From Macrostomum lignano (Eukaryota), in assembly GCA_002269645.1 (NCBI GenBank), contig NIVC01003157.1:51999-115998 (forward strand): DNA of 64,000 nt. Direction: 5' to 3'. Each line of letters begins with the position of its first letter. Positions within the stretch are counted from its first letter, which is position 1. A program made the translations under genes and the position numbers. A model generated the notes under the pieces. It did not search any database, was not told the origin of the DNA, and saw only the letters and a program-made list of their open reading frames with translations. Shown here one piece after another: positions 25,015 through 42,300 of this stretch.

Positions 25015-28000
25015 GAGACTAAACGTAACTTCAGACGACTCAGTGAAAGAAAAGTGGCAACGTCGAGAATCTCGTCATCGAAGCAAGCATCGAAGCCGCT
25101 CAAAGATGAGGACTCGAGCGATGCTAGCAGGCAGCGTATGAGACAGGAGTCCCTGGACGGTTGGAATGCAAGAAAGGCAGCCGAACTCAAGGCGAATCGA
25201 GCCTCATCAGCTCAAAAGAAGCGGGAGAACTGGTGTGTTCCTTATTCCTTGACTTTCTCTGTAATCAAGGAACAATCACTTCTAGCTCTGTAGCTAGGCA
25301 ACCCAGTTATCAGATAAAGGTATCACTTACTTTTAGTTGTATCCTCAGTTGAGTACTCTTCTTAGATCTCGCGGTAGGTCTAGTCACCAGTAGTTCTGGT
25401 CTTAGATGATCCGTAGATCAGGCGCCTTGTCTCTTCTTTGGTTCTGGTCCTGGTTCTTCTTGGACTTCCGATGAAGCTCCTTCCGGCCGGTATCTGCAGT
25501 TAGGACCAATCAGAGGCCTCGTATCAACAATGGGTACCCTGCGCCGAACAGCGGTTTCTCCTTAGCCTTCTCCTTCTAGTAGTGCCTCTATGCACTCTAG
25601 TTAATGCTCCGGTACTCTCTAATAGATCCTCTAAGATCTACTAGGGTAGTCCTTCGGGCGACTACTGCCAATGGAGTCTCAAATGGACTCAAGAGTCTCA
25701 ACAGACTCTAACACTATAACAATAGTGAGTCGACTCAACAACAACTGGCGCAAATGAGAAAGGCTTACCGCAATAACTCGACCGAGTCTCGATTGACTTG
25801 GTGACCAGGAAGTCCTCCTAAGGCTTCCTCTTCGGAGCTTCTCCTATCGTCGGGAGTTGGCTCCGGGTCCGCTTCGGACCACTTGTATTTATAGAGAAAC
25901 AGACCCCTCGGGAGGTCGTTCATCACCTTTTTCGTGAATGTCAAAGGGTCACGATTCGGTGGCTGTCAAGCATGACAGGGTAGAAAGTTAAGCAACTAGT
26001 CTAGTGTAAGCGCGCATGATTGGTTACCGTAGGAGAGCTATTTTTAGATACTTTGATTGGTTCATCCGGGTACAAGCCGAATGATGAATCGTACTGGTAG
26101 GTGGGGTTTGAACTGACAAATGTAGGTTGCACGTGACCAATGATGAATCGCAGATGGGGTTTGTACTGACAATTGTAGGTCACACGTGATTGGTTGGTTG
26201 CTAAAAATAACATGTCCGACTTTTCGCTCGTCTGATTTGTTGACTAAAATATATATGTTATTCAATGCTTATTCTTATACATTCTACTTGTTTCACTACT
26301 ATGTAAGTAGTACGTTAACAATTTTATCACTTTTTGCGGGAGGCAGAATACTCTACAGAACGAAGCTAAACGAAGTGAGGCCGACCAAAAGAAAACCGAG
26401 AAAAGGTCAGGCCGCCTACCAGAGCTGGATACAAGGACTACTTAAGAACACAGGACGTTACACTTGCAAATATTGGCAGAATTCTAAAAGGCCGCTTTGA
26501 ATGCATGTGTCTATGGTTTTAGTGGCCTTTTTGCTATTTGAAGCAATGTGTATATAATACATGAATAGAAATTAAAGCCTAGTGAATAAAGCTTTTTATA
26601 TGCATGTATACCGACAAAATATTTATATTTTCTCCAAAAGGTGATCGTGAACAGGGTGTAGAAGTTTAACAAAAAACGAAGAAATACCCAAAAATAACAA
26701 GAATGACAATATTGACTAAACCCTAAACCCTAAATCTTACTAAACCCTTGTAAAAGGAATTTGCTAACCGGCGAGATATTCTTATAAGTAGCTCGTTGCC
26801 AAGTGCAATATCCAAAAAAGAGTCGAAAATTCTCAGAAACACATTAACTGAACTGTTAACGCAACGCTGTTTGGAGCCGAGAAAGAAGACGTAGCAGAAA
26901 CTAGCATACACAACAAGCCATTCTGGCGGATGACTCAATTTTCCGCGAGACACCAACTTTGTGAACTCACAGCTGTTGTCTGTAGCATATGCCTCGGTGC
27001 TTTTCCCGGACAAATTTTGTTCAAAATGTTGTTGTGTCATAGGCAGTCTGGAACATTGAAAAGATAACTCACATTTCAAATGCACTTTTATTAAATACAC
27101 TTACTGGAAGCAGAAAGCCGTAAGCTACTGGATGGCCAGCCTTGAAAGACAGATGGAGGGTCGATAGGTCGCATGTGACGCCCGGCTTGCTTCATTCTAG
27201 CATCCTCCGGCCAATGCTTGCGGCATACGCCCATGTACGCAGTAGCCTGCTGTAATACGAATCGAGCGATTTAATTTATGCTTCGAGACAAAATGGGGAA
27301 TACCAGAATGCATAAAATGTTATCTTACCTTAGTTGCAACGGGCAAAGCCTTCATGGGCAAAGCTTGTGCAGCCTGGAACGCAACACTTCGTCGGCATCT
27401 TGTATAACTCAATTGATAATTTAATTTGAAGAAAGAAATAAAAGATCCAGAGAACACAATAAAGTGAGCTGTTTGCGATCTTGTCTGCTTGGTGCTCTAA
27501 CGTAGACTTATGGGTTATGAGTATCATGCTACGCTGCGATGCGAATTACTAAGCAAAAAGGCCACTAAAACCATAGACACGTGCGTTCAAAGCGGCCTTT
27601 TAGAATTCTGCCAATATTTGCAAGTGTAACGTCCTGTGTTCTTAAGTAGTCCTTGGCTGGATACAGCAAAAGAGAAAGTCAGGATGGGTAGGAAAATTTT
27701 CCAATCACTTTTCACTTTGCTACGAGCATTTTTCTTCAACTGCGCCATAGACAGTCATCAAAACCGATATTGGTTTGATGAGACTTTCAATGCAATGCAA
27801 TGGATAACGGCGCTCGCCAGACAGTCGTTGTCACGTGCTGCGACCGCTGATTCTTTGCATTGTTTTTCTGAAGATCCTAAAGACAATGCATTGTTTGTAG
27901 TAATGGATTGTTCTGCAATAAAAATGTGAATAATGATCGTCAAATTGCTAGACAATGCAATGCAGAGGCTATGGCAATGCAAGTGTCAATGATGGCTGTC

Positions 28001-29412
28001 TATGACATGAAGCATTTGTCAATGATGGCTGTCTATGGCATGAAGCATTTATCAATGATGGCTGTCTATGGCATGAAGCATTTGTCAATGATGTCAATGA
28101 TGGCTGTCTATGGCATCAAGCATTTGTCAATGATGGCTGTCTATGGCATGAAGCATTTTATCAATGATGGCTGTCTATGGCATGAAGCATTTGTCAATGA
28201 TGTCAATGATGGCTGTCTATGGCATCAAGTATTTGTCAATGATGGCTGTCTATGGCATAAAGCATTTGTCAATGATAGCTGTCTATGGCATGAAGCATTT
28301 GTCAATGATAGCTGTCTATGGCATAAAGCATTTGTCAATGGTGGCTGTCTACGGCATAAAGCATTTGTCAATGGTGGCTGTCTATGGCATGAAGCATTTA
28401 TCAATGATGGCTGTCTATGGCATGAAGCATTTGTCAATGATGGCTGTCTATGGCATGAAGCATTTGTCAATGATAGCTATGGCATGAAGCATTTGTCAAT
28501 GATGGCTGTCTATGGCATGAAGCATTTGTCAATGATGGCTGTCTATGGCATCAAGCATTTGTCAATGATGGCTGTCTATGGCATAAAGCATTTGTCAATG
28601 ATAGCTGTCTATGGCATCAAGCATTTGTCAATGATAGCTGTCTATGGCATAAAGCATTTGTCAATGGTGGCTGTCTATGGCATAAAGCATTTGTCAATGA
28701 TGGCTGTCTATGGCATCAAGCATTTGTCAATGATAGCTGTCTATGGCATGAAGCATTTGTCAATGATGGCTGTCTATGGCATGAAGCATTTGTCAATGAT
28801 GGCTGTCTATGGCATCAAGCATTTGTCAATGATAGCTGTCTATGGCATGAAGCATTTATCAATGATGGCTGTCTATGGCATGAAGCATTTGTCAATGGTG
28901 GCTGTCTATGGCAAAGCGAGTAAATTGTGACTGTACTTGACATTATTTTCACTGTGTAGAGCAAAACAAAGAACACGCAGACAGCCGATAATGGACAGGA
29001 AGAGGCTGAAAAAAAGAAGGCTGCCAACGAAGCCGCAATAGAAAAGTGGCGCAGCGAGAAGACTACCCAGCAGATCGAGCAGCGCAGAATTAGGCTGGCA
29101 CAAGAGAGCGAAGCAAAGGCAGAAAAAGAGGCAGAAGAGGAGGACCGGAGATCGCTCAGCGCAAGCAAACGCGATGCCTGGGAGAAGAGAAAAAAGCAGG
29201 AGTTGCAGCGGAAGCGCCAGTCAAGACTGGAGGCGGAGCAGCTGGCTGCAGAAGAAAAGCGCCAGGCTGAAGAACGAAAGCGAGAATCAGCCCGATTGCG
29301 CCACGAGGAGTGGTGTGCGAAAAAGGATGATCGCGAAGAGGAGTCTGCAAAGTCGAAAGGGCAACGCGTGATGGTGCCCTGGCGACCTAATACTACTGTC
29401 AGGAGAAAATGA
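25015..29412 (+). CDS. Charged coiled-coil protein gene with repeated W-x3-K motifs (CCDC34/CCDC181/MAP9-like); one exon interrupted by a P-type element
   Basis: Exon-like blocks ~25015-25232 (DGWNARK), ~26350-26431 plus 27664-27690 (AAYQSWIQQKRK) and 28960-29412 (AAIEKW, RDAWEKRK, HEEWCAKK, stop). The exact exon structure is uncertain. Confidence 0.55.
25260..26212 (-). mobile_element. Probable solo LTR
   Basis: On the minus strand: a TGTTA start, duplicated ~60-bp blocks with CCAAT boxes, CTATAAATAC (TATA) at ~25890, and a ...TACA end. No convincing TSD was found. Confidence 0.4.
26432..27655. mobile_element. Non-autonomous P-element-superfamily DNA transposon, 1224 bp
   Basis: 104-bp TIRs starting CAAGGACTAC with 2 mismatches; perfect 8-bp TSD GCTGGATA (26424-26431 and 27656-27663); internal THAP-domain start MPTKCCVPGC on the minus strand. 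Confidence 0.92.
27984..28913. repeat. 33-bp minisatellite (about 28 copies)
   Basis: Unit ATGATGGCTGTCTATGGCATGAAGCATTTGTCA. Confidence 0.97.
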
Positions 29413-30864
29413 GAATGGCTACTGGCAGTAAGAGCTTCCACTTCTCGCTGAGTAGCACTGCTCAAAATTAAACTTGTTGATAATACTGATGCCAAGATAT
29501 TAGCTCCTATACAAAGGAAAATCATTCACTGTTATAATGCTTTACCAGAGAAAAACGTTAAAAACTTCACCAAAACTGTCAACCTTGGGATACATGACCA
29601 GCAAGTAGCTGTCTTCATGTACGCTCGTATGTATCTAGAATCAACAAAAAAATGTCGTTAGAAGTACCACAGAAGCATGCGCAACTCATGATTTTTATTT
29701 TCTTGATCTGGATTTTTAACAAAAGCTTCACAAACATACACTCGCGTACAATAAAGTCTGTTCTGATTAATTATTGGAATCAAAAAGGTGTTTAACTAAA
29801 GGTGTTTAGAGAATAAAATTTTATTTTACTACACCTACTTAGAATATTTTTTAAAACTCATAAAAACGAATTTCAGCTCATTCTGAAATAAGAATCCCGT
29901 CGGCGGCTCGAACAAACTCATAAATTTTAGAATTGCATGTCTTCAAAAATGATACAGTTGATGTACACAGCAGATGTGTCCAACTTGAGACACCGTAGGA
30001 CCGTAGTTAGTACAACAGCAAAATGAAAACCAATGAAAATAGAATCAGAAAAATACCTTAGTGCGTCCAAAAAGTTCTTAGCACCCCTCCTATCTCTGCA
30101 TCTGTTCAATCGATTTTTATAAAAATTTACACAAACATGGACCAATATGTAATGAGTTCAGTGCTTAAGTTTCAGATTAATTGGGTTGACAGAGCAAAAG
30201 CAATCGATCATTTGCTGAGGAACCTACGAAATTAGCAATTTTATTAGCCATTTTAGTAGCCATATAAATACGCTACGATTTTCCCCAACTTTGGGATCTT
30301 GGACGCTCTGGTTCTCTTGCTAGAACTCGATCTCAACTACTCGTATAAGCGTTAGGTAAGAATTATTCCGAAATTTTCCAAATTGAGTTGAGTTAGTCAA
30401 TTGAGAGAAAGAGGAAAGCCGTATTGGCAGTGAGACAAGTTATTGAGCAATAACTTCGTGATAGTAGTAGTAAATTACAGAATTTAAAGTCATTAGAGAA
30501 AAGTAAAGCGTCACAACCAGCCTTGACGCTAGACTTAGTAAACAAGCAGCGTATTGGAATCTAAAAAACAGCTTAATCAGTGCCCTACAGCTCGGGCACC
30601 AAAACAGCTACCAAGAAAATTCTCTGCTATGCGAGGAGGTCTGAAAGGTTATAACAAAATTAATTCATAGAAACGAGCTAGTATTGTTATTACTTGTTAC
30701 GCTCGTATTTGCAGTGACAAAAATGAAGAGAGATCTCGTAGATTTGTATGCGACTAAAGTACACGATACAACAAATCATCTACTCAACTCAATGAGTGAA
30801 TTAATTATTGAAAAATTTAGCATTACTCCATAAGCGTTACTGAATGTGCACTTGCTCAATAAAA

Positions 30865-33154
30865 TCAGCCAGAAGCAACTGTTGGGTTGAGAAAAAACGG
30901 CTTAGACAGCGTCGATACAAACTTCAGGTTGCTGTCTCCTGCCGTGGCTGTCATACCAACCAGCTCAGCAATGCTGCACTCGGTGTGTCGCTTGTCAATT
31001 AGTGAGAGCATCTCCTGCATCGGCGAAGGCCTTCGAGTTCCGCTGTAGCTGACAACTAAGAAGTCCGCGTCCTTTATTTTCAGAATAGTCTCGGCCGTTG
31101 AGCCCGCTAAATTCGCCAGGGTGTGAAAGAAGAAGAGCTTCGGCTTGCCCCGCAGACCGCGACACTGGTTCGGCTTGAACCTGCCGATGATGTCCCCGAG
31201 CTCCAGCTGCTCGCCATCGCTGGTGCAGATCGCGCCATCGGTGCCAGCTTTGGCTGCTAGAACGCAGCACACGAAGCATTGGTGATCCGAGAGCTCCTGG
31301 CTGAAGGCTGTCTGGTTGAGCGCGTCAACCAACTCGTCGCACGTGGGGTCCATAGGAACTTTGACGGTGAATCTCAGTCTAGCGAAGACAGTTTGCGCCA
31401 GACTGACGTCCGCGAGGAGACTTGGCTCGTCACCGCCGATGCAGAACAGCAGGCAGGCACCCTGCGGTGGAGCTGCTTCATAAACCGGCTCCACACACAG
31501 CGCTGCTGGCTGGTTCTCAGCATCCTCAGCTGCGACAGGTGAGGTATCAGGTTCGCTGCAAGAATAGGCAAGGCAAATCTACATCAATTTTCATAAAATG
31601 CTTGTTTACGTGAGTGTCAGCACGCATTCAATGTTCGATGAATTTGTACGAGTACTTTCAAGATATTGATTTGTTTTGAATCATCTAATGTAGATTTAGA
31701 GTTTCTAGTATCGACTAGCTCTATTAAACCAAGTTCACCAAAATCTGATCTGCTTACGTATTGAGCAGAAACTCGTGCCGCAGCAATTCTGCAGCTGACT
31801 TTCTCAGTCTGCGGTTTTGGGCAACGCAGTCTGCATAGAAATTAACCAGCTTCCTGCTGACTGGACGAGTCAGCTTTGGGGCACCCTGTAAGCTCAGGCA
31901 GTTGGCCAGGGCCAGCATATTCGAGCAATGGCCGTGTGGCAAAGTGCCTGTAACCATTTGATAAACTGTGCAGCCCATCGCCCAGACGTCTGACTCTGGG
32001 CTGTATTTCACAGTGTCCGATTCATCTGCTCCCAACAGCTCGGGTGCCAGAAAGTACAGCGTTCCCTTCGGAGTTGGAGTATAGGCTGATACGTGGCTGA
32101 CCGACCGGTTCAGCTGCACAGAAAGGCCGAAGTCGATCAGTTTGATTTCACTGTCCCCTCTGAGTACGATGATATTGTTGCAATTGATGTCTCTGTGCAG
32201 CACCGGTGGCTTTCTGCTGTGCATGTAGCTGAGAGCACTGCAAATCTGTTTGGAACAAGCCGTGGGTTATTCACCATGTTTGCAGGCGAGAAATATTAGT
32301 TCGTAGAAGCAGAAAGAGAAGACAAAGTGCATTAGAGACTTTTCGGTGATTAGTGCTCTTCCGTATAACGAAATTTCGAATCGGATAGACTAGACGTCTT
32401 CAAAACTTTTTTGTAATCGTAGGAACGTCCATGAGACGTTTCATTTGTGATCCTCCAAGAAGCTTGTTTCGAAAAAATGGTGAATCAATAATAAATATTA
32501 ATAGAAACATTATTTATTTACTATTAATTTTACTCGTAGAACTACGACCTAAAAATAACGTATTGGATACGTCTAACTTTCCATTGGATAAATAGTTTTG
32601 TTACGTATTTATTGACATTAGTTCACCTCACTCTGTAAGACTCATTGCGGACACAATGAAGTTTGCAGCTTGGATAAGAAGCATATCTACGTAATCTTGA
32701 ATTCTGAATTTGGAATTCGGATTTCAAAGAAAAATAACATAAAATATGGGCATTCACAGCACTTTACCTGACCCGTGAAGCGTTGAATAAATAGTTCGTC
32801 CAGCGGTTTACCATTAATGAATTTTATCAGAGACTGACCGTCTAAGAGCTCCATGAATAGCACGACCGTGAAGGGTTCCGAGTAGCAGATCTCGATGAAC
32901 TTGACAATATTCCTGTGCCTGAGAAAGCAGAGATTCCGCTCGCCCTGCACAATGGTGTCGATATTGGATATCAGGTCGCTTTGTGCGTTCCCTCCTTGCA
33001 TGGGCAGTTTGATGGTCTTGACTGCGCACTTCACCCCTCGGTCTGTCTCTACCTCGTGAACTTCGCCAATTCCGCCCCTGCCCAGCAGACGAATGCATGT
33101 CCAGGTCTTGAGGAATGGTGAGCATAGAGATCTGAAGCCATGATTTAGGGACAA
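30865..33154 (-). CDS. Ser/Thr kinase (MAP3K/STE11-like) fused to a C-terminal catalytically dead caspase domain, 3 exons, about 520 aa
   Basis: Exons ~33141/33154-32768, 32245-31758 and 31555-30865, joined by GT-AG introns of matching phase (0 and 2). Kinase motifs GRGGIG, CAVK, HRDINCNN, DFG, APE, SDVWAMG. Caspase-fold motifs HQCFVCCVL and GKPKLFFF lack the catalytic His and Cys. The start codon is unresolved: the ORF track begins at TTG, and ATG 33141 needs one added C. Confidence 0.85.
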
Positions 33155-33469
33155 TATATGCTTGTATGTATATACTTTGGTTACTGCGACTGCGCGTACT
33201 TGTTCTACGAACAGTTATTTTACTGTTATTGTAGGAAAAACTGTATTTTTAATGCCTTTAGTAAATTCAAGTGTAACTTACGATAGCTCAATTCGTTCTT
33301 CAAAAAAATTCCTATAAGATGCCGGAGTAAAAATTGGGAGTTGAAGCGAGCGCCGAGTCAGATAGCTGAAAGAACGGAGAAGTTTCGGTTTCTGTCACTG
33401 AAATTGCAGCTAAGCATATATGGGATAATATGAAGCTGCCTGTACGTAGTTGCAAAAGCACTGGATCTT

Positions 33470-34625
33470 CCCGCACGGTTTTCAATCGAAGGGTTTTCCC
33501 GCAGGGTTTTCAATCGAAGGGTTTTCCCGCAGGCTTTTTCCGCAGGGTTTTCAATCGAAGGGTTTTCCCGCAGGCTTTTTCCGCAGGGTTTTCAATCGAA
33601 GGGTTTTCCCGCAGGTTTTTTCCGCAGGGTTTTCAATCGAAGGGTTTTCCCGCAGGTTTTTTCCGCAGGGTTTTCAATCGAAGGGTTTTCCCGCAGGCTT
33701 TTTCCGCAGGGTTTTCAATCGAAGGGTTTTCCCGCAGGTTTTTTCCGCAGGGTTTTCAATCGAAGGGTTTTCCCGCAGGGTTTTTCCGCAGGGTTTTCAA
33801 TCGAAGGGTTTTCCCGCAGGGTTTTTCCGCAGGGTTTTCAATCGAAGGGTTTTCCCGCAGGCTTTTTCCGCAGGGTTTTCAATCGAAGGGTTTTCCCGCA
33901 GGGTTTTCCCGCAGGGTTTTCCCGCAGGGTTTTCCCGCAGGGTTTTCCCGCTGGGTTTTCCCGCTGGGTTTTCCCGCTGGGTTTTCCGGCAGGGTTTTCC
34001 CGCAGGGTTTTCAATCGAAGGGTTTTCCCGCAGGGTTTTCAATCGAAGGGTTTTCCCGCAGGGTTTTCAATTGAAGGGTTTTCCCGCAGGCTTTTTCCGC
34101 AGGGTTTTCAATCGAAGGGTTTTCCCGCAGGGTTTTCCCGCAGGGTTTTCCCGCTGGGTTTTCCCGCTGGGTTTTCCCGCTGGGTTTTCCCGCTGGGTTT
34201 TCCGGCAGGGTTTTCCCGCAGGGTTTTCCCGCAGGGTTTTCCCGCAGGGTTTTCCCGCAGGGTTTTCCCGCAGGGTTTTCCCGCAGGGTTTTCCCGCAGG
34301 GTTTTCCCGCAGGGTTTTCCCGCAGGGTTTTCCCGCAGGGTTTTCCCGCAGGGTTTTCCCGCAGGGTTTTCCCGCAGGGTTTTCCCGCAGGGTTTTCCCG
34401 CAGGGTTTTCCCGCAGGGTTTTCCCGCAGGGTTTTCCCGCAGGGTTTTCCCGCAGGGTTTTCCCGCAGGGTTTTCCCGCAGGGTTTTCCCGCAGGGTTTT
34501 CCCGCAGGGTTTTCCCGCAGGGTTTTCCCGCAGGGTTTTCCCGCAGGGTTTTCCCGCAGGGTTTTCCCGCAGGGTTTTCCCGCAGGGTTTTCCCGCAGGG
34601 TTTTCCCGCAAGGTTTTCCCGCAAG
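33470..34625. repeat. Array of 13-bp GGGTTTTCCCGCA units plus a 41-bp higher-order variant
   Basis: Directly visible; 41-bp compound units on the left and a pure 13-mer on the right. Confidence 0.97.
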
Positions 34626-34851
34626 AAAAAGCTCGTTGTGAATTTTCATGCAAAAGTTCGCATTCGTCACGAGACTAGTTACATATGTAGTTCATCTCGT
34701 GATTGTGTGGGAAGCCATACTGCGATTTATTGCCAGATGTAGCGCTTTGGACAGCTTTAAAAAACGCTCAGTGGGGAAACATTTGGAAAATCGCAGCTGC
34801 AAAACCTTGGGCAGTAAAGACGAATCAGGAAAATAGTGGGAGGAAGCTGGT

Positions 34852-35493
34852 CTAAAAAATCTCAGTGGGGAAATCTCGGTGGGGGAATACTGCCGCTGGG
34901 AAAATCTCAACTGTCCGTAGTAATAGGGGTTGAATAGGTAAATGAAATTGAAGAGTTTTAGCAGGCCACCTGGAGAGCAGAGCGCTGGTCTCGCGGCACC
35001 CGAGTCCGTCAGCCAAATCCAGCGCATCATCGCCGTAGCAGTTCTGCCGCGTCCAGTCGGCTCCGAGCCGCAGCAGCTGCTCCACAACCTGCGGCCGCCT
35101 CACTGCGAGCATCAGCGGGGTCTGGTGCAGGCTGTTCAGGCTGTTGACAGAGGCCCCAGCCGCTATCAGAGCCTCGCAGTCGGCTGGCGAGCCCAGACCA
35201 GCAGCAGCCTTGTGCAGGCACGAGTTGCCCAGCACATCGACCGCTGTGACATCCGAGAGTTCAATGAGTCGCTGGCGGATGCTTGCATGGAGTTCTGGGT
35301 CGATACCGGTGTCGCACACTTCCACAAAATCCATCAGCACCGTGGAGCCAGTGCTGGATGGAATGTCGCAGTTGCTGCAGCTTGCCAGCCTTTGAAACTC
35401 TTCCACATCGCCCCTCATCGCTGCGCATATCAAAGTCCTTCGCAGTGCCTTTTCCTGCGGATCGTGAGCGGGGATGGCAGCAGTGAATCGCAT
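34852..35493 (-). CDS. Ankyrin-repeat protein (intronless ORF; last ~25 aa may derive from a repeat)
   Basis: GSTVLM, GNSCLHKAA, GASVNSLNSLHQTPLMLAV, LLRLGAD and GDDALDLA repeats. Confidence 0.85.
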   Translation of the reverse strand: MRFTAAIPAHDPQEKALRRTLICAAMRGDVEEFQRLASCSNCDIPSSTGSTVLMDFVEVCDTGIDPELHASIRQRLIELSDVTAVDVLGNSCLHKAAAGLGSPADCEALIAAGASVNSLNSLHQTPLMLAVRRPQVVEQLLRLGADWTRQNCYGDDALDLADGLGCRETSALLSRWPAKTLQFHLPIQPLLLRTVEIFPAAVFPHRDFPTEIF

Positions 35494-36237
35494 GATAACA
35501 GAAGTTCGTCCCTTCACGAGCGTAGAATGATCATGACGGGAAATACATTAAAACCGACGAGGAGTTCTCTTTTTTCGGCTCAAAAATAGTGATAGCTTTT
35601 TATTGACAGTTCGAATGCTCATTGTTTAATTAGTACTTCAATATAACATCCATGTCTTATTGCTCAATCGATTCCTACAAAGCTTTATTTGCAGGAATTA
35701 GCAATTTATCTACATGTATATTTTTTATAGTTTTGTGCATACGCCGAAATAACCAAGTAGTCTAAAAATGACAACAGTGGCCTTTTATTTGGTTCCTCGT
35801 TTGGTTATTCTTTATCAATTCAATTATTTATAATAAGCGCAACTTATGCATTAAGAACTGTAAAGAACTACAGTACGTACACTTGTGTCTTTTTACTAGC
35901 AAAACTAGCGTGAAGTTTTATTAAAATGAAAGATGTTGAGTCCAATTTTTCCTGAAAATTTTGACAACAATATTGCTTAACAGTAAGAAGAAATTAAATC
36001 AAAGCTTCTTTGTTATTTTGGAAATTTTTGGCTCGGAACATATTTATCGAATAATAGGAAAAATGTATGTATGAGATATGTATGCATGTCAGCATGCACT
36101 AAAAGATAGCTTTTTAATCTGCTCGTATTTGTGTTGACTTTGGATTTTTAAAAACTCCGTAGAGTCTTTTTCGCGCAGGTCAAACCAGCCTCTAAATAAC
36201 GAGCTTTCTGAAAAACGAGATTTCCTAGAAAGCCGTT

Positions 36238-37021
36238 CTACTCATTCCACTCATCCACCATAAGTCGTCTACTATTCCTGACAGTCAAAGACGTTGCAAA
36301 CCCAACTTCAACTTGCAAACATGTTAAGTAGGCTGGAATAAATATTATGAAAAAGTGTCTTACCATCTCCGTGAGACCAGTGACGGTCAGGGTGAGGTAT
36401 CCAGATGTAACCAAGCGAGTTTCACTAAAACAAAAAAAGTTTTCCAGGTATAGGAACAATTGGCAATGAAAAATGCTTTTTAGTCCATCCTCTTACCGTT
36501 CGATGAATTCAGCAAAACCAGATCTGCTCTCCTTCCGAGCGAGACTCAAAATGCTCTTGCTCTCTCCGTTGAGTATCTTTTTCTTATCACTGCTTCGATC
36601 TCGCAGGCGCAGCAGGTGCAGGAGATGCTTCGCGCACCGCCAGCTTCCGCTCCTGACCGCCTCCGTCAGAGGTGAGCCGCCCTCCACATTCTGAAGCCAC
36701 TTCGCGTCGAACGGCAGCAGTGCCAGCAGCCGCACATTGTCCCGCCTGGCCGCAAAATGAGCAGCCGTGTCGCCACCTGCTGTGGTCTCGAACGGGTCGG
36801 CGCCGAGGTGTAGCAAGTACTCGATGCACTTTGCCGACTGCCAGGGGCTTGGAAATTCGGTGTCAGCAGTCAGCATGAGAACTGTCCGACCATTTTGATC
36901 TTTACACGTCACCAGTTCAGGCGTGGCCAGTGAGCGAATCTGGTCGAAGTCGCCTTGAAAAGCTAGTCGAGCGATTTGCTGTGAAACAGGCAAGTATTCT
37001 GTATTACTCGAAAATGGCCAT
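36238..37021 (-). CDS. Ankyrin-repeat protein; main exon 36493-37021 plus a short downstream exon
   Basis: DQNGRTVLM, LLHLGADP, GDTAAHFAA and GSPLTEAV repeats; GTAAGA donor after FIER; ATG 37021 needs removal of one T in a T-run. The 3' end is uncertain. Confidence 0.8.
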
Positions 37022-37890
37022 AATACCTCGAGCTATTATTTTAGAGAATGCAGCAAAGTACATGTGCATGTTCATGCAGAACCTTGCGCGCGTGCGATGT
37101 ACGGCCATCTCATTTGGAAATTTAGAAACCAATCTGTTTAGCAGTGCAACTACTATTTACATGTTTCATATACTATACATCAATATTTGCTTGCAGTACA
37201 TCAACACTGCATCAGCATGTAAGTAAAGAAAGAATAGGATCCGATACAACTTCACGGTTAATGCAATAACAGAAATTTAATACTAATAGTCAAATCTGAA
37301 ATGGAACCTTTTAGAATTTACTGATACACATATATCCGTACATGTTATTGAGAAAATCACATTTCAGATCTACCTGGATTGACTGACTGTTCACATCGAT
37401 CGAGTCTTGGTGATTTGTTAACGAAGACATTTTTACCAACAGCAGCTTAATTTAAACCGTTTATTAGTTTAACCCGAGGTGTCTGAGGCAGGAAAATAGG
37501 CTTGGGTTTTCACTCTGATATACAGATACTCGTACAAATAAGATTGCTTCCACGGTCAGAGAGGCCTACCGTGGATCCATGCGCAGCAGTGCTACATGTA
37601 GATGTACATGTCTGCTGTGTTACATATAAGCCTGCGGTTGCATGAAAAGTCCTTAAAGAATCATAAAATGTTTGAATTTCTTCATATCAGAATGTGAAAT
37701 CAGCGAACAGTTCAAAACACATGTAGTTACGCATGTACATGCACTGTGTCACTACCCAGAGATAGCATAAACTCTGCTGGAAACGCTATCGTGCTTGCAT
37801 GCATGTTTCATACAAAAATGTATGTCCTGGCACTTAGAAAAAAGTAAATTTACTTAAAGCGTTGAACAGAGCTGGATATTGCAAACTATT

Positions 37891-38353
37891 GGTCAGGAGA
37901 TGGCCGCTCATAAAAGGGTGGAGGGGTTAGGATGGATGGTCGCTATAATGGTCGGGAGATGGTCGCTCATAAGAGGGTGGAGGGGGTTAGGATGGATGGT
38001 CGCTATAATGGTCGGGAGATGGTCGCTCATAAGAGGGTGGAGGGGGTTAGGATGGATGGTCGCTATAATGGTCGGGAGATGGTCGCTCATAAGAGGTTGG
38101 AGGGGGTTAGGATGGATGGTCGCTATAATGGTCGGGAGATGGCCGCTCATAAGAGGGTGGAGAGGGTTAGGATGGATGGTCGCTATAATGGTCGGGAGAT
38201 GGCCGCTCATAAGAGGGTGGAGAGGGTTAGGATGGATGGTCGCTATAATGGTCGGGAGATGGCCGCTCATAAGAGGGTGGAGAGGGTTAGGATGGATGGT
38301 CGCTATAATGGTCGGGAGATGGTCGCTCATAAGAGGGTGGAGGGGGTTAGGAT
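37891..38353. repeat. 60-bp minisatellite (about 8 copies)
   Basis: Unit GGTCGGGAGATGGTCGCTCATAAGAGGGTGGAGGGGGTTAGGATGGATGGTCGCTATAAT. Confidence 0.97.
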
Positions 38354-39397
38354 GAATAGTTGTTAGAAAACTAAGCCTGACATGGTCGCAGGAATGGTCG
38401 AATTACATGATCGCATGGCCATCTTGGTCGCATATTTGTCGAAAAGTCGAGATTCGCGACCAATAATTTTTATGCGGAATGCATATTTTCTATGGTCTGC
38501 TACCCGGCAGAGTTGCTAGATTATAATAACAGCTGATAATCTCAACAGTGACAAATTGACATTCCTCGGGTGGTTTTAATTGGATATTAAGCTATCAATC
38601 TTCGCGATCACCTGCTAATACTTTTGGCTACAAAGCAGCTGATGGATCGGACCCCTGGTATACTCGAAATTTGTCTTAACTGATTCAGAAAGGACCAGAA
38701 GTACAAAAATGCAGAGTAATATGTATATAAGTGTAACTTTAATAACATATAGCCGATACTAATGACAAGCTTTATTTCCTTTGAAGCAACAGTCAGATCG
38801 ACAGTTGAGACGGCTATAGAAATAATTCACTTGCTACAAACAATGCGTTTTGCAACAGCAAATTCAGCGTGAACACGAAAATTAAGTTGCCATTCATGGG
38901 GTCTGATGCATAGGTTTGCTAATAAAGATAATTAAACATATACAAAGAAATGTTACTGCAGATTCACTCATTCGTACATACAGAGTAACTTTTTTTGTTC
39001 TTAGTAAGGAGTTTCTTAAACAGATTTAACATATACCTTACATATTAAGGTATATCGAAGAATGTATTCCGGAACCCTGTGTATGCTAACTATAACTCCT
39101 GTTAGATAATGTTACTTCACAATCTGATCTTATTAAAAAACAGCACGTAAAGTGAGGTATGGCAACTTGCGTTGTATTTACCCACACGCTTAATGACCTT
39201 TTATTGACCCCTATGTATCCATCAATGTAGGTAGATGTTCCAACTGCAGAATTCGGGCCAAATTACACGCCTTTCTAAGCCCTAATGAGTTGCCCAAATG
39301 CTAAGCACAATGATGTAAATTGTCTTGAAGATACAGTATGAAAAGTCAGACAGTTTAATCGAATTTTACAAGCCTGCAACCCTAAATAGAAGGCGAA

Positions 39398-42300
39398 CTA
39401 GAACTTGTAGTCCTTCTGGTACTTCTTAGCCGCAGATACGCTAGCCTGCGGCGCTGGCTCCTGCTGACCGGCGCGCGGAGGAGGCCGCTTCCTGGAGCCA
39501 GTTGATGCAGCGCCGCCGGCGCCAGAAGAAGCAACGCCTGGACCGCTCGCGGCGCCGCCAACAGCATAAACCTTGGAACTGCCCATGAATGCGTCGCCAA
39601 CATTGGTCTGCATCTCGGGCAACACACGGTAGGCCAGAGGCTCTTCGCCGTCGCCTTCCATGGCAGCTTCCACTGCGGCAGCGGTTCGCTGTTTCCGCAG
39701 CTCGATCATGTCGGGCGTCTCCAGCCCGGCCGGCGTGGCCGACGACAGCGCGCCGCTTGGGGTGGCCGCTCCGGCCAGGGCCGCTGCGACCGCGCCGTCT
39801 TCGTCATCGCCCGCCTCCTCGTTGCCATCTTCATCATCGTCATCGTCGTCGTCTTCCTCTTCTTCCTCCGAGGACTCGGACTCCAGCTCGCCCCACAGGC
39901 GCCTCTCAACTGGCTGGCTGGGAGTCTCGGCAGGGGCAGCCAGCTGCTGCTGGGTGGCGTAGCCGAACACATCGCCGTAGACTGGGCGGCCGTGAGCATC
40001 AACTGGTGGCTTGCCCCAGCCGCCTGAAATAAGGATAGGGGGAGCAGTGAGCATTCTGCGATTACCTAATGACGGCAGCAGCAGTGGATCGGAAGTGGAT
40101 CGGCTGAATTTTCTATTTCTTATTCATAGTTGCATTTAACCCAAAATGGTCCAATTTTGAAGAGAAATGCTGTTTTTATATACAGCAAAGTAAGAACTTG
40201 TAAAAAATCTACCTATTAATCGATGCGACCTGATTGAGTACTGACTGGATTCTTAACCTTTATGACAACTATAATAATATTTAAGTATATTAATAATAAT
40301 AAATAATATATTATGTGCAACCGACAGCTCAGCCGCAGCTATAGCGCGGCACATTGGAAGGCTGCATACGACTGTTCAGTCAAAGGCTGGGGGGGGGGTC
40401 GCCACACAAACCCTCAATTACCCCAGCTAATGCTGGCACCCATTTTACAGCTGGGTGAACTGAAGCAGTGCAGAGTTGTGTCTTGATAAAAAAACAAAAA
40501 TTGTTCCGAGTTGGCCGAGATTCGAACCCCCGACCTTCCAGTCGCAGTCCGACGCTCTAACCACTAGACTACAACAGTTTAGCAGTTACATAAGCATGCC
40601 CAAATTTTGTGCCGAAACACAAGAGACAGTCAAGACATGCAATTGAAGAGTAGTCGCAGTCATTAATACAAGTACAAACCTGCGTGATAGCCAAAAGAGC
40701 AGCCTTCAGGTATGGGAGCATTCAGGCCGGGTATGCGCAGCCGGGGAAACGCAGGCGGCGGGCCGTAGCGCTGCATGGCGATGAGCCAGGGCGGCGGGTA
40801 TCTGTCGCTGCCGGGCCCGACAGGCATACCAAGCGCGGTGCGGAGCTCGTCAGATAGAGCGCCGGGCTTCTTCGCCCTCAGCCGGGTCTCGAACTCGCGA
40901 CCTTCGTAGTACAAGTCGCCGTGGGCTATAAAAAAGATAAACGGTAGTGGATTGATTACAATAACTGCCAGATGGTTATTTGAGGGCTGTGGACAACAAG
41001 CCGCAACTTAAGGCGACAACCGCTGACCCCTGAGCACGCACACGAGATATGTACACTGCCACACGCTCACACAGGGTGTACAGCGACCCTGACTTTTTAA
41101 TTGTCAGGCATGTATTCTCCTCGTGATTTGGGGATTGGCCCTCAGGGGTTTTCCGATGAAAACGGTAGCTAGGCTAAGAAGCGTCCCGGTCCCAGAGTCA
41201 CTTGTGACGCCCCAGAGTCGTTGCAGTCAATAGAAGTAAAATAGGAAAGAAGTGACTCTAGATTCCGCCAAAAAGTTATCAAAGAGTCGCCTAGAGTCTA
41301 TTTGGGGCGTTTTTTGTCTGTGAGTCTGAAAAGACTCTGGGGCGCTTTTGTAATGTCTCTGGGCTTGTATCTGAGGCGTGCCAGAGTCGCTGTAGAATTA
41401 CCGAGTTGCCTCTAAAGCGCTAGAGTCACTGGTGAGCTGTTTGCAATGACTCTAGCGATTCTTGTCCCGCTAAAGTATTCAACGGGTGAGCTGCTCTGCC
41501 CTCCAAGGACTGCAGAAGTAAAGACAGGAATAGTTGCGAGACAAAAACTCACTGGTGAGATGCGGCTTGACCTGGTATTTGAAGAAGGCGTCGTGCAGCT
41601 TCTGGTAGTCGATGTCAATCTTGCCCACTTTCGGGCGGACTCGCTCCCGCATCTTCTGCTTCATAGTCTTGGCGTCGTCTTTCTCTTGACCAGTCTCGCG
41701 CATCTCCATAATGCCCGTGGCCTTGATGAAGTCGGGCAGCTGGAACGGTGGCTTCTCTATGCCGCGCTTGCCCTGTAGGTACTTGCGCTTAGCGCACCAG
41801 TGCCTAGGAACGGCCACGGCATTCCGGTAAGCCTTGAGCAGGCAGAGCAGCTTGGGGTCCTTGGAGCAGACATCGTGCATCTCAACTACTTCAGGCCGGT
41901 CCACGCTCTGCTTGAGCTCCGCAACGCTCATTCGGGTTAGCTTCTTCAGCTTCCGTTTCGACATCTTCTGCACGTCCTCCTCCTCGCGTTTGGCAGCAGC
42001 CGCAATCTCATCCTCATCGTCATCTTGATCTTGCTGCATCATGCCAGCTGCTCGAGCTTTCAGCAGAGCAAGGTTGCTGCTCAGAGAATTGGCTGAAGAG
42101 AGAGTATCAGGAGCACCGTTGGTGTCCGAGCCGCTGAGCTTGGCCTGGCTGACCGAGGCGGAGGCAGCTGCCGAGTCCTCGCTGACGGGTCTGAAAGCCT
42201 TGAAATGTTAGTTTGAAAGATTAATTAGGGAGAGCCTCAGTTTTAAAATGATTCTGCCAGGTTGCGATAAGCACGGATGCATTAAGGTGCACCGTTACTG

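What the first reader, a model, noticed from the sequence alone, without database searches (positions are those of the whole stretch)
30865..33154. Kinase fused to a catalytically dead caspase domain in one spliced gene
Seen in sequence: three minus-strand exons join through canonical introns with matching phases (RFTGQ|ICSAL; FLLN-T-EPDTS) into about 520 aa, a complete Ser/Thr kinase followed by a caspase p20/p10 fold. The caspase SHG motif reads VLAAKAG and QACRG reads FHTLAN, so both catalytic residues are gone. The kinase keeps GxGxxG, the VAIK Lys, DFG and APE but has HRDINCNN (Lys to Asn). Established: dead caspase domains such as c-FLIP act as scaffolds or inhibitors, and kinase-caspase crosstalk (RIPK1/caspase-8) normally uses separate proteins with death-fold adaptors. 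Inference: this could be a single-chain kinase/pseudocaspase regulator that docks on real caspases without a death fold. I do not recognise this architecture from model animals.
Basis: partly seen in the sequence, partly recalled or inferred. Interest (0 to 1): 0.82.

Follow-up and report, generated by a model that had tools for sequence, protein, structure and literature searches.

The report
Flatworm ankyrin–kinase–dead-caspase fusion gene
This is a real, intact gene of the flatworm Macrostomum lignano that joins ankyrin repeats, a STE20-like protein kinase and a caspase-fold domain with no catalytic residues; the kinase-plus-caspase layout was noted in a 2024 survey, but the dead active site and the likeness to the cell-death regulator cFLIP were not mentioned there.

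Summary
The three minus-strand exons join in frame through GT..AG introns. They encode a protein kinase (Pfam E 1e-45) followed by a caspase domain (E 1e-11). AlphaFold and Foldseek show a complete p20/p10 caspase fold. The catalytic His and Cys and most S1 pocket residues are gone.

There is no ATG in its first exon. The gene has 8 exons (37430..30865), and its 903-aa product is identical to GenBank PAA52966.1 (Macrostomum lignano Mlig026099.g2), a transcript-guided model. The N-terminus is a ~360-aa ankyrin region. This region is collinear with the ankyrin prodomain of catalytically intact Macrostomum caspases and shares their intron phases.

The kinase is STE20-like, not RIPK-like. The Lys-to-Asn change is family-wide and also occurs in active LIM kinases.

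The architecture is not unprecedented. A 2024 paper reports an M. lignano caspase with a kinase prodomain. At least four diverged paralog groups share it, and two of them add a live executioner-type caspase domain.

Best reading: a cFLIP-like non-catalytic partner of ankyrin-caspases with a built-in kinase output. This mechanism is inferred, not shown.

Interest is moderate. It is a new variant of a known kind.

The parts
37374..37430 (-). Exon 1 (57 nt), start codon ATG at 37430-37428
   Evidence: Mapped from the P0001 gene model in L001; boundaries identical, donor GTAGAT. The resulting 903-aa protein is identical to PAA52966.1.
36497..36978 (-). Exon 2 (482 nt), ankyrin repeats; ends in phase 2
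   Evidence: tblastn of P0001 and P0003; splice sites CAG| and |GTAAGA; Pfam Ank_4 at residues 69-107.
36364..36424 (-). Exon 3 (61 nt), helical insert within the ankyrin region
   Evidence: The Ank-caspase gene L002 has an exon at the same position, with the same flanking intron phases (2 before, 0 after).
34970..35454 (-). Exon 4 (485 nt), ankyrin repeats; ends in phase 2
   Evidence: Pfam Ank_2 at residues 261-338. The counterpart exon in L002 is 488 nt with the same phase.
33468..34623 (.). 13-bp tandem repeat (about 87 copies) inside intron 4; not coding
   Evidence: Tandem Repeats Finder. Intron 4 is 1604 nt here and 1299 nt in the sister copy.
33282..33365 (-). Exon 5 (84 nt, phase 2-2), linker between the ankyrin region and the kinase; skipped in model P0003
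   Evidence: Predicted disordered (residues 368-396, pLDDT below 50).
32768..33131 (-). Exon 6 (364 nt), kinase N-lobe: GRGGIG, AVK Lys, alphaC Glu.
   Evidence: Acceptor TTCAG|ATCTCT, donor CAG|GTAAAG; Pfam Pkinase.
31758..32245 (-). Exon 7 (488 nt), kinase C-lobe: HRDINCNN, DFG, APE. Together with exon 6 it forms an 852-nt cassette bounded by phase-2 introns on both sides.
   Evidence: best PDB match TNIK at E 2.5e-26. Reading through the donor gives ACG TAA, an in-frame stop.
30865..31555 (-). Exon 8 (688 nt plus stop): a disordered acidic linker (TEPDTSPVAAEDAENQ...) followed by the complete pseudocaspase domain (p20-like and p10-like)
   Evidence: Pfam C14; AF2 pLDDT 87.5, pTM 0.84; Foldseek to procaspase-8 6px9 with TM 0.83 and rmsd 2.7 A; active-site census; dN/dS 0.20 against the sister copy.

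Best explanation
SHOWN. The locus is the intact 8-exon Macrostomum lignano gene Mlig026099.g2. It encodes a 903-aa protein with three folded domains on flexible linkers. (i) An N-terminal ankyrin-repeat region. (ii) A STE20-like Ser/Thr kinase that keeps every catalytic motif except the catalytic-loop Lys, which is Asn throughout this family. (iii) A C-terminal domain with a full caspase fold in which the His/Cys dyad, the S1 Arg and Gln and the substrate loops have been removed; this makes it a pseudocaspase. The pseudocaspase belongs to a Macrostomum clade that also holds catalytically intact ankyrin-caspases. The ankyrin region is homologous to the prodomain of those caspases, including its intron phases. 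The two kinase exons form a symmetric phase-2/phase-2 cassette sitting between the two parts.

INFERRED MECHANISM. The protein works like a flatworm counterpart of cFLIP-L with a kinase built in. Its ankyrin prodomain takes it to the same, still unknown, platform as the live ankyrin-caspases. Its dead protease domain pairs with a live caspase domain through the conserved caspase dimer surface, or with another copy of itself. This would modulate activation of the live caspase. The pairing would also bring the STE20-like kinase into the complex, giving a phosphorylation output and so coupling a death or stress decision to kinase signalling. The disordered Asp-containing linker (TEPD/T, AAED/A) could let an active caspase cut the kinase free, but this last step is speculative.
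For: Gene and product:
- All 8 exons have GT..AG introns and the ORF is intact.
- The product is identical to GenBank PAA52966.1.
- BOX15 gene models come from an RNA-seq-guided transcriptome assembly (StringTie, TACO and a de novo transcriptome), not from ab initio prediction (PMC5730564).
- The sister copy in L001 has the same 8 exons.

Selection:
- dN/dS between the two copies is 0.40 overall and 0.20 for the pseudocaspase core (6 nonsynonymous and 9 synonymous changes; binomial p = 0.003 against neutrality).

Fold:
- AF2 model of the pseudocaspase: pLDDT 87.5.
- Foldseek top hits are procaspase-8, caspase-7, -3 and -6 and the caspase-8 chain of the caspase-8:cFLIP-L complex 3h11, at E about 1e-14 and TM up to 0.83.

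Dead active site:
-.

Family:
- The kinase-adjacent caspase domains of paralogs P0007, P0121, P0123 and P0135 all lack the Cys (QARNR, QTHRD, QAEKQ, QTEQQ).
- P0121 and P0123 also carry a C-terminal domain with HG plus QACRG or QSCRD, which groups with executioner caspases (100% bootstrap). Dead and live caspase domains therefore co-occur in one chain.
- The pseudocaspases cluster with the M. lignano Ank-caspases (70% bootstrap). This agrees with the published 'sister to ANK caspases' placement (PMC11463336).

Shared prodomain:
- The ankyrin region aligns collinearly with Ank-caspase P0141 at 35% identity over 369 aligned positions, E 3e-36.
- Intron phases match.

Kinase probably active:
- HRD..N and DFG are nearly invariant in more than 30 paralogs, and the outgroup P0037 still has the Lys.
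- LIMK1 has the same Lys-to-Asn change.
Against: - There is no interaction, activity or expression data of any kind. Heterodimerisation is argued only by analogy with cFLIP and from the co-occurrence of domains in paralogs.
- The full-length AF2 model gives no confident inter-domain geometry (pTM 0.50).
- The NJ support for monophyly of the kinase-adjacent pseudocaspases is weak (55%).
- Two models from a different annotation (P0003, P0420) stop right after the kinase. A kinase-only isoform may exist and could even predominate.
- This gene, unlike P0121 and P0123, has no live caspase domain, so its partner is hypothetical.
- The loops around the former active site are heavily trimmed. In caspase-8/cFLIP some of these loops contribute to the activating contact.
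Confidence: 0.45

Rival explanations
1. The pseudocaspase is only a homodimerisation handle. Caspase folds dimerise through their last beta-strand. The dead domain would simply bring two kinase domains together for trans-autophosphorylation, with no link to live caspases or to cell death.
For: The fold and the terminal strand are retained (E210-214 in the model). The catalytic machinery is entirely dispensable. The kinase motifs are conserved. The window protein has no live caspase domain.
Against: This does not explain why the ankyrin prodomain is shared with live Ank-caspases. It also does not explain why paralogs P0121 and P0123 keep a live executioner-type domain in the same chain.
Confidence: 0.22
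2. The caspase-like tail is a cleavable regulatory appendage. An active caspase cuts the disordered acidic linker (TEPD|T or AAED|A) and releases or activates the STE20-like kinase. From my own knowledge, caspase cleavage activates the STE20 kinases MST1, PAK2, SLK and HPK1 in this way. The pseudocaspase would serve as an autoinhibitor or a docking decoy.
For: The linker 676-704 is predicted disordered (pLDDT below 50) and contains two xxxD motifs. The linkers of the paralogs are also Asp/Glu-rich. The kinase is STE20-like.
Against: Acidic disordered linkers are common, and the motif positions are not conserved between paralogs. There are no cleavage data. This idea is compatible with the main explanation rather than exclusive of it.
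Confidence: 0.13
3. The main product is ankyrin–kinase only. Intron 7 is usually retained, giving the immediate stop ACG TAA, and the caspase exon is a relic that is joined rarely or not at all. On this view the fusion is an annotation choice.
For: UniProt models P0003 and P0420, from another assembly and annotation, both end at ...FLLNT. Most family members are Ank–kinase proteins that stop a few residues after the same point.
Against: The transcript-guided models of both copies include the exon. Donor, acceptor and phase are conserved in both copies. The exon is intact and under purifying selection (omega 0.20). It folds confidently. Four other diverged paralog groups keep kinase and pseudocaspase adjacent, including models from the other annotation (P0007, P0123).
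Confidence: 0.1
4. The domain is still a protease that uses non-canonical residues.
For: None beyond retention of the fold.
Against: His, Cys, the S1 Arg and Gln, the GSW motif and the L1-L4 loops are all replaced or shortened. The paralogs substitute different residues at the Cys position (R, H, E, L), which argues against a conserved alternative nucleophile.
Confidence: 0.02

Closest known systems
cFLIP-L (CFLAR), the vertebrate pseudocaspase partner of caspase-8
   Same: Both have a full caspase fold without the catalytic dyad. Both carry the same type of recruitment prodomain as a live paralogous caspase: DEDs in cFLIP, ankyrin repeats here. The Foldseek hit list includes the caspase-8 chain of the caspase-8:cFLIP-L complex (3h11_B).
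   Different: The origin is independent: this domain lies in a Macrostomum-specific clade, not with CFLAR. The prodomain is made of ankyrin repeats, not DEDs. A whole protein kinase is inserted between prodomain and pseudocaspase. The active-site loops are much more reduced. Heterodimerisation has not been tested.
Platyhelminth ANK caspases (ankyrin prodomain plus caspase; PMC11463336, citing Lee et al. 2014 for Schistosoma)
   Same: Both combine an ankyrin prodomain with a caspase domain of the same lineage. M. lignano Ank-caspase P0141 shares the prodomain (35% identity, E 3e-36) and the intron phases.
   Different: ANK caspases such as P0141 keep HG and QACRG and have no kinase. Here the kinase cassette is present and the protease is dead.
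[quoted passage not shown]
   Same: It is the same species and architecture, and the authors drew on the same GenBank PAA annotation set. It is very probably this gene or one of its paralogs. The published placement as sister to ANK caspases agrees.
   Different: Text searches of that paper found no mention of a catalytic-site motif (QACRG), pseudocaspases or inactive caspases. It does not connect the ANK-caspase prodomain to this protein. It describes a single such M. lignano caspase and says no other unexpected prodomain was detected in platyhelminths. It treats the protein as a caspase with an unusual prodomain. Its accession list was not available to me.
STE20-group kinases (TNIK, MAP4K4, SLK, MST3, PAK1)
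   Same: These are the best sequence matches of the kinase domain (E 2.5e-26 to 1e-20). The activation-segment motif KGTLYFLAPE resembles the STE20 motif GTPYWMAPE.
   Different: Identity is only about 25-30%. The catalytic loop reads HRDINCNN rather than HRDIKxxN. The protein has ankyrin and caspase-fold appendages. The kinase belongs to a Macrostomum-specific expansion.
Other kinase–caspase fusions: Alosa pseudoharengus LOC143121611 (PYRIN–kinase–caspase), a Batillaria attramentaria protein, and an Eisenia andrei caspase with a kinase domain
   Same: Each has a protein kinase N-terminal to a caspase domain in one polypeptide (PMC11463336).
   Different: These are independent fusions. Their kinases do not align full-length with this family. 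The Alosa caspase groups with caspase-8/10. Both the Alosa and Batillaria proteins keep an intact QACQx active site.

Membership tests
Caspase fold (Peptidase_C14 / clan CD) | Significant sequence match to the C14 family | tested here: met
   Pfam PF00656 at E 9.4e-12, 45.5 bits against a 21.4-bit cut-off. PDB caspases match at E 1e-12. A profile of the family hits caspase-3, -7 and -8 at E 1e-37 to 1e-26.
Caspase fold (Peptidase_C14 / clan CD) | Complete p20 plus p10 alpha/beta sandwich | tested here: met
   AF2 pLDDT 87.5, pTM 0.84. Foldseek: procaspase-8 6px9 with TM 0.83 and rmsd 2.7 A over 219 columns; 334 PDB hits at E <= 1e-3, and the 50 best are all caspase-family entries.
Active caspase (C14A peptidase) | Catalytic His (SHG) and Cys (QACxG) dyad | tested here: not met
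   His is replaced by Ala (LAAKAG, with a 2-aa insertion). QACRG is replaced by HTLAN, so Cys becomes Leu.
Active caspase (C14A peptidase) | S1 pocket (two Arg plus Gln) and the GSW / L3-L4 substrate loops | tested here: not met
   There is no Arg at the first Arg column. Gln is replaced by His. GSW is replaced by PSP. The loops are shortened compared with 40 caspases.
Catalytically competent eukaryotic protein kinase | GxGxxG, beta3 Lys, alphaC Glu, HRD Asp, catalytic-loop Asn, DFG, APE | tested here: met
   GRGGIG, AVK, GERN, HRD..NN, DFG and APE are all read directly and aligned to TNIK. Pfam Pkinase matches positions 4-263 of 263.
Catalytically competent eukaryotic protein kinase | Catalytic-loop Lys (HRDxKxxN) | tested here: not met
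   The loop reads HRDINCNN. Asn is family-wide, and the outgroup P0037 has HRDIKCSN. Active LIMK1 also has Asn here (PMC8750758), so activity is not excluded. Enzymatic activity cannot be tested with these tools.
STE20 kinase group | Closest similarity to STE20 kinases, and placement within the group in a phylogeny | tested here: inconclusive
   The best PDB hits are STE20-group kinases, but at low identity. No kinome-wide tree was made. In the large database the best non-Macrostomum hits were fungal KIN1-type and bacterial kinases.
Platyhelminth ANK caspases | Ankyrin-repeat prodomain N-terminal to the caspase domain | tested here: met
   Pfam Ank_2 and Ank_4 at residues 69-348. The region is collinear with the P0141 prodomain and shares its intron phases.
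Platyhelminth ANK caspases | Caspase domain in the ANK-caspase clade with an intact active site | tested here: not met
   Clade membership with M. lignano Ank-caspases has 70% NJ support, but the active site is destroyed and a kinase is interposed. Sequences from parasitic species were not available for the tree.
cFLIP-like regulatory pseudocaspase (functional class) | Dead protease domain plus a recruitment domain shared with a live paralog | tested here: met
cFLIP-like regulatory pseudocaspase (functional class) | Heterodimerises with, and regulates, a live caspase | not testable with these tools
   No multimer prediction or experiment was available. The only indirect evidence is the co-occurrence of dead and live domains in paralogs P0121 and P0123.
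CFLAR orthologue | Descent from the caspase-8/10/CFLAR lineage, with tandem DEDs | tested here: not met
   No DED was found by Pfam. The domain groups with Macrostomum caspases, not with caspase-8/10.

The most novel reading that the evidence does not exclude
Macrostomum has independently evolved a cFLIP-type switch in which the decoy caspase is hard-wired to a protein kinase. The ankyrin prodomain would recruit Mlig026099 to the same platform as the live ankyrin-caspases. The dead domain would pair with them to tune their activation. The STE20-like kinase would turn that assembly into a phosphorylation signal. Paralogs P0121 and P0123 would go further and put kinase, decoy and live executioner-type caspase in a single polypeptide, forming a self-contained life-or-death module. 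This would be a new solution to kinase/caspase crosstalk that uses no death-fold adaptors at all, in an animal where RNAi and transgenesis make it testable.
Probability: 0.3. Interest if true: 0.72.

Novelty: new variant of a known kind. Interest (0 to 1): 0.52.

Why it matters
Pseudoenzymes that regulate their active relatives are a general theme, and cFLIP is the textbook case for caspases. Here a second, independent pseudocaspase lineage keeps the cFLIP logic: the same recruitment domain as a live paralog, with a dead protease. It uses ankyrin repeats in place of death-fold domains and carries its own kinase.

If the inferred mechanism holds, three things follow. Decoy-caspase regulation would have evolved more than once. 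Kinase–caspase coupling, achieved by RIPK1 and caspase-8 through adaptors, could also be achieved by gene fusion. And there would be a concrete entry point into the largely unknown extrinsic-like death pathway of flatworms, which according to PMC11463336 have lost FADD and, in parasitic species, DED caspases.

Macrostomum lignano has RNAi and transgenesis, so the idea is testable.

If only the descriptive part holds, this is a lineage-specific gene-family curiosity that refines one line in a 2024 survey.

Tried and rejected
- **Caspase domain alone against the 5.8-billion-protein index:** no hit at all, not even the 96%-identical sister copy. This is a limitation of the word index, not biology. 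The exhaustive HMMER search of cluster representatives was used instead.
- **Profile of six Macrostomum pseudocaspase domains against the same index:** it returned only ordinary caspase-3, -7 and -8 proteins and no fusion proteins. This confirmed family membership and supplied sequences for the AF2 alignment, but it was useless as a census of domain architectures.
- **Direct transcript evidence:** I could not inspect RNA contigs myself and rely on the published description of how BOX15 models were built.
- **Literature search for the gene id Mlig026099:** nothing found. The supplements of PMC11463336 are not held, so I cannot say which accession that paper used.
- **Full-length AF2 model:** the domains fold, but pTM is 0.50 and the linkers are disordered, so nothing can be said about inter-domain contacts.
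- **RIPK-like kinase idea:** rejected. The best matches are STE20-group kinases, and no RIP kinase is among the 60 best listed PDB matches.
- **Lys-to-Asn as evidence for a dead kinase:** rejected as unsupported.
- **Decaying pseudogene exon:** rejected on the intact ORF in both copies, omega 0.20 and retention in deep paralogs.
Full report
**1. What is in the sequence**

- The exon ending ...RFTGQ stops at 32768, in front of GTAAAG.
- The next exon starts at 32245, after ...AACAG, and stops at 31758, in front of GTAAGC, with a split Thr codon.
- The last exon runs 31555-30868 and is followed by TGA.

The joined product carries a full Pkinase domain (E 1.3e-45) and a Peptidase_C14 match (E 9.4e-12). 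Solved caspases match the C-terminal part at E 1e-12 to 1e-10. In those alignments the SHG histidine is Ala within LAAKAG, and QAC(R/Q)G is HTLAN.

**2. The gene is larger than the finding**

The stretch 33154-33132 is just open frame upstream of a CAG acceptor.

A database search identified the organism as Macrostomum lignano. It returned a 902-aa protein (P0001, BOX15_Mlig026099g1, 98% identical) that has ankyrin repeats N-terminal to the kinase.

I derived that protein's exact exon structure on its own contig (L001: 8 exons, all GT..AG) and transferred it to the window. Every splice site is conserved and the ORF is intact:

| Exon | Coordinates (minus strand) |
|---|---|
| 1 | 37430-37374 |
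| 2 | 36978-36497 |
| 3 | 36424-36364 |
| 4 | 35454-34970 |
| 5 | 33365-33282 |
| 6 | 33131-32768 |
| 7 | 32245-31758 |
| 8 | 31555-30868 |

The product is 903 aa. It is letter-for-letter GenBank PAA52966.1, BOX15_Mlig026099g2.

The BOX15 annotation was built from RNA-seq with StringTie and TACO, mapped de novo transcripts and TransDecoder, not ab initio (PMC5730564). The kinase-to-caspase junction therefore has indirect transcript support.

Two UniProt models from a different annotation (P0003, P0420) end at ...FLLNT. That is exactly what retention of intron 7 gives (ACG TAA). A kinase-only isoform therefore cannot be excluded, and junction-read counts are still needed.

**3. The two genomic copies**

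The window and L001 are syntenic duplicates, about 97.6% identical in introns. This fits the duplicated karyotype of the sequenced line.

Between them dN/dS is 0.40 for the whole gene, 0.41 for the kinase and 0.20 for the pseudocaspase core. The core has 6 nonsynonymous and 9 synonymous changes, with binomial p = 0.003 against neutrality. The numbers are small, but the dead domain is not drifting.

**4. The caspase-like domain**

An AlphaFold2 model built with 42 homologues is confident (pLDDT 87.5, pTM 0.84). It has the full alternating beta/alpha pattern, including the p10-like half.

Foldseek against the PDB gives only caspases at the top: procaspase-8 6px9 (TM 0.83, rmsd 2.7 A), caspase-7, -3 and -6, and the caspase-8 chain of the caspase-8:cFLIP-L complex, all at E about 1e-14.

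I compared the domain column by column with 40 real caspases.
- The first S1 Arg is missing.
- His is replaced by Ala, with a 2-residue insertion.
- Gln is replaced by His.
- Cys is replaced by Leu.
- GSW is replaced by PSP.
- The loops that build the substrate groove and the inter-subunit linker are cut short.

The core motif GKPKLFF and the hydrophobic strands remain. This is a structurally sound, catalytically dismantled pseudocaspase.

**5. The kinase**

The best solved relatives are STE20-group kinases: TNIK at E 2.5e-26, then MAP4K4, SLK, MST3, PAK1 and ASK1. They are not RIP kinases. All catalytic motifs are present except the catalytic-loop Lys (HRDINCNN).

That Asn is nearly invariant (HRDINCxN) across more than 30 Macrostomum paralogs that also keep HRD, the loop Asn and DFG. 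The most basal family member, P0037, still has HRDIKCSN. Active LIMK1 has HRDLNSHN (PMC8750758). Conservation of the remaining motifs across a large expansion argues for a working enzyme rather than a pseudokinase, but this is an inference.

**6. Family context**

An exhaustive HMMER search with the pseudocaspase domain, followed by local domain mapping, cluster look-ups and Pfam, shows that the closest relatives are all from M. lignano. They fall into three architectures.
- **(a) Kinase with an adjacent pseudocaspase and ankyrin repeats.** P0007 is kinase-kinase-pseudocaspase-Ank. P0135 is kinase-pseudocaspase-Ank. P0121 and the seven-member P0123 cluster are kinase-pseudocaspase-Ank-caspase.
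- **(b) Ank–caspase with an intact HG/QACRG** (the P0141 cluster).
- **(c) Other fusions.** P0124 is LRAT–pseudocaspase and P0126 is Ras/Roc–caspase.

In every kinase-adjacent domain the Cys is gone, but it is replaced by different residues (L, R, H, E). The C-terminal domains of P0121 and P0123 keep HG plus QACRG or QSCRD.

In an NJ tree the kinase-adjacent pseudocaspases, P0124 and the Ank-caspases form a Macrostomum clade with 70% support. Monophyly of the pseudocaspases alone has only 55% support. The live C-terminal domains of P0121 and P0123 sit with executioner caspase-3/7 at 100%.

In a kinase tree the whole Macrostomum family is monophyletic (100%). The fusion-bearing members branch basally, and the many Ank–kinase-only genes form a derived crown (100%). 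This is what an ancestral fusion followed by loss of the caspase exon would produce.

**7. Ankyrin region and exon logic**

Residues 12-363 align end to end with residues 42-393 of the live Ank-caspase P0141 (35% identity, E 3e-36). The match includes non-repeat segments such as GSWRCAKHLLHLLRLRDR against GSWECARHLLHLLRQRRR.

The P0141 gene (L002) has counterpart exons of 524, 25 and 488 nt with phases 2, 0, 2. The window has 482, 61 and 485 nt with the same phases. All later introns in P0141 are phase 2.

In the window, the intron before exon 6 and the intron after exon 7 are both phase 2. The 852-nt kinase cassette is therefore symmetric. It could be inserted into, or removed from, an Ank–caspase gene without breaking the frame (and arithmetic on exon lengths). 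The gene is best described as an ankyrin-caspase paralog that carries a kinase cassette and a dead protease.

**8. Full-length model**

AF2 folds three domains: Ank 11-367, kinase 397-675 and pseudocaspase 705-897. Two disordered linkers (368-396 and 676-704) separate them, and pTM is 0.50, so the domains behave as beads on a string. The second linker contains TEPD|T and AAED|A. Whether these are caspase sites is speculation.

**9. Mechanism**

The strongest analogy is cFLIP-L: a dead caspase domain that carries the same recruitment module as its live paralog and regulates it by heterodimerisation. All the structural preconditions are met here. Paralogs that combine dead and live caspase domains in one chain suggest that the natural partner of the dead domain is a live one. 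The kinase would add a signalling output.

None of this has been tested. The rivals remain open: a pure homodimerisation handle for kinase activation, a cleavable regulatory tail, or a kinase-only main isoform. I put 0.45 on the main mechanism. I put about 0.9 on the descriptive statement that this is a real Ank–kinase–pseudocaspase gene.

**10. Novelty**

[quoted passage not shown] It also reports a kinase-domain caspase in the annelid Eisenia andrei. My searches of its text found no mention of catalytic-site motifs, pseudocaspases or inactive caspases. It mentions a single such M. lignano caspase.

I also found unrelated kinase–caspase fusions with intact active sites in a fish (PYRIN–kinase–caspase, Alosa) and a snail (Batillaria).

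The bare architecture is therefore known. What is new:
- the pseudocaspase status;
- the ankyrin prodomain shared with live caspases;
- the symmetric kinase cassette;
- the multi-paralog family, including members that carry both dead and live caspase domains.

Verdict: a new variant of a known kind, of moderate interest.

Noticed in passing
window 33468-34623: A 13-bp tandem repeat (TTCCCGCAGGGTT, about 87 copies) fills much of intron 4 of the gene. It creates long spurious ORFs on both strands. Intron 4 is 1604 nt here and 1299 nt in the sister copy.
   Followed up: partly
window 37890-38354: A 60-bp tandem repeat (7.8 copies, 97% matches) lies about 460 bp upstream of the gene's ATG. The array is much longer in the sister locus L001 (roughly 2050-3450). 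It could be promoter-proximal.
   Followed up: no
window 27984-28913: A 33-bp tandem repeat (about 28 copies) lies downstream of the gene and is also present in L001. It gives rise to the long mechanical ORFs at 27908-28930 and 28815-29525.
   Followed up: no
window 10594-16053 (minus strand): A cluster of long intron-less ORFs: a protein-primed type-B DNA polymerase (DNA_pol_B_2, E 2e-13), a weak Endonuclease_7 match, and an rve integrase (E 8e-9). The combination suggests a Maverick/Polinton-like element inserted here.
   Followed up: partly
window 38448-42042 (minus strand): The upstream neighbour is an SF3B2-like splicing-factor gene (DUF382, E 2.5e-53, at 41479-42042). The same neighbour (DUF382 + PSP) precedes the sister copy in L001, so the duplication is segmental and syntenic.
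   Followed up: partly
window 51877-53124 (+): An ORF with a Gcd10p/TRM6 domain (E 6.5e-35), a tRNA m1A methyltransferase subunit homologue.
   Followed up: no
L001 1810-1947: A 140-bp fragment 87% identical to kinase exon 7 (window 32179-32044) sits between the SF3B2-like gene and the 60-bp repeat in the sister locus. It is absent at the equivalent place in the window. It looks like a stray exon fragment from a paralog.
   Followed up: no
P0121 (PAA89054.1) and the P0123 cluster, M. lignano: These paralogs have the order kinase, pseudocaspase, ankyrin repeats, then a second caspase domain with intact HG and QACRG/QSCRD that groups with executioner caspases. A kinase, a dead caspase domain and a live one therefore sit in one polypeptide.
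   Followed up: partly
P0141 cluster (PAA56209.1, PAA82384.1, PAA90489.1), locus L002: Free-living M. lignano encodes ankyrin-prodomain caspases with an intact QACRG. PMC11463336 describes ANK caspases as unique to parasitic platyhelminths apart from one annelid, so that statement may need revisiting.
   Followed up: partly
P0124 and P0126, M. lignano; P0244, Alosa pseudoharengus: Further unusual caspase-domain fusions: LRAT–pseudocaspase (Cys to Ser), Ras/Roc–caspase, and a fish PYRIN–kinase–caspase-8-like protein with an intact active site.
   Followed up: no
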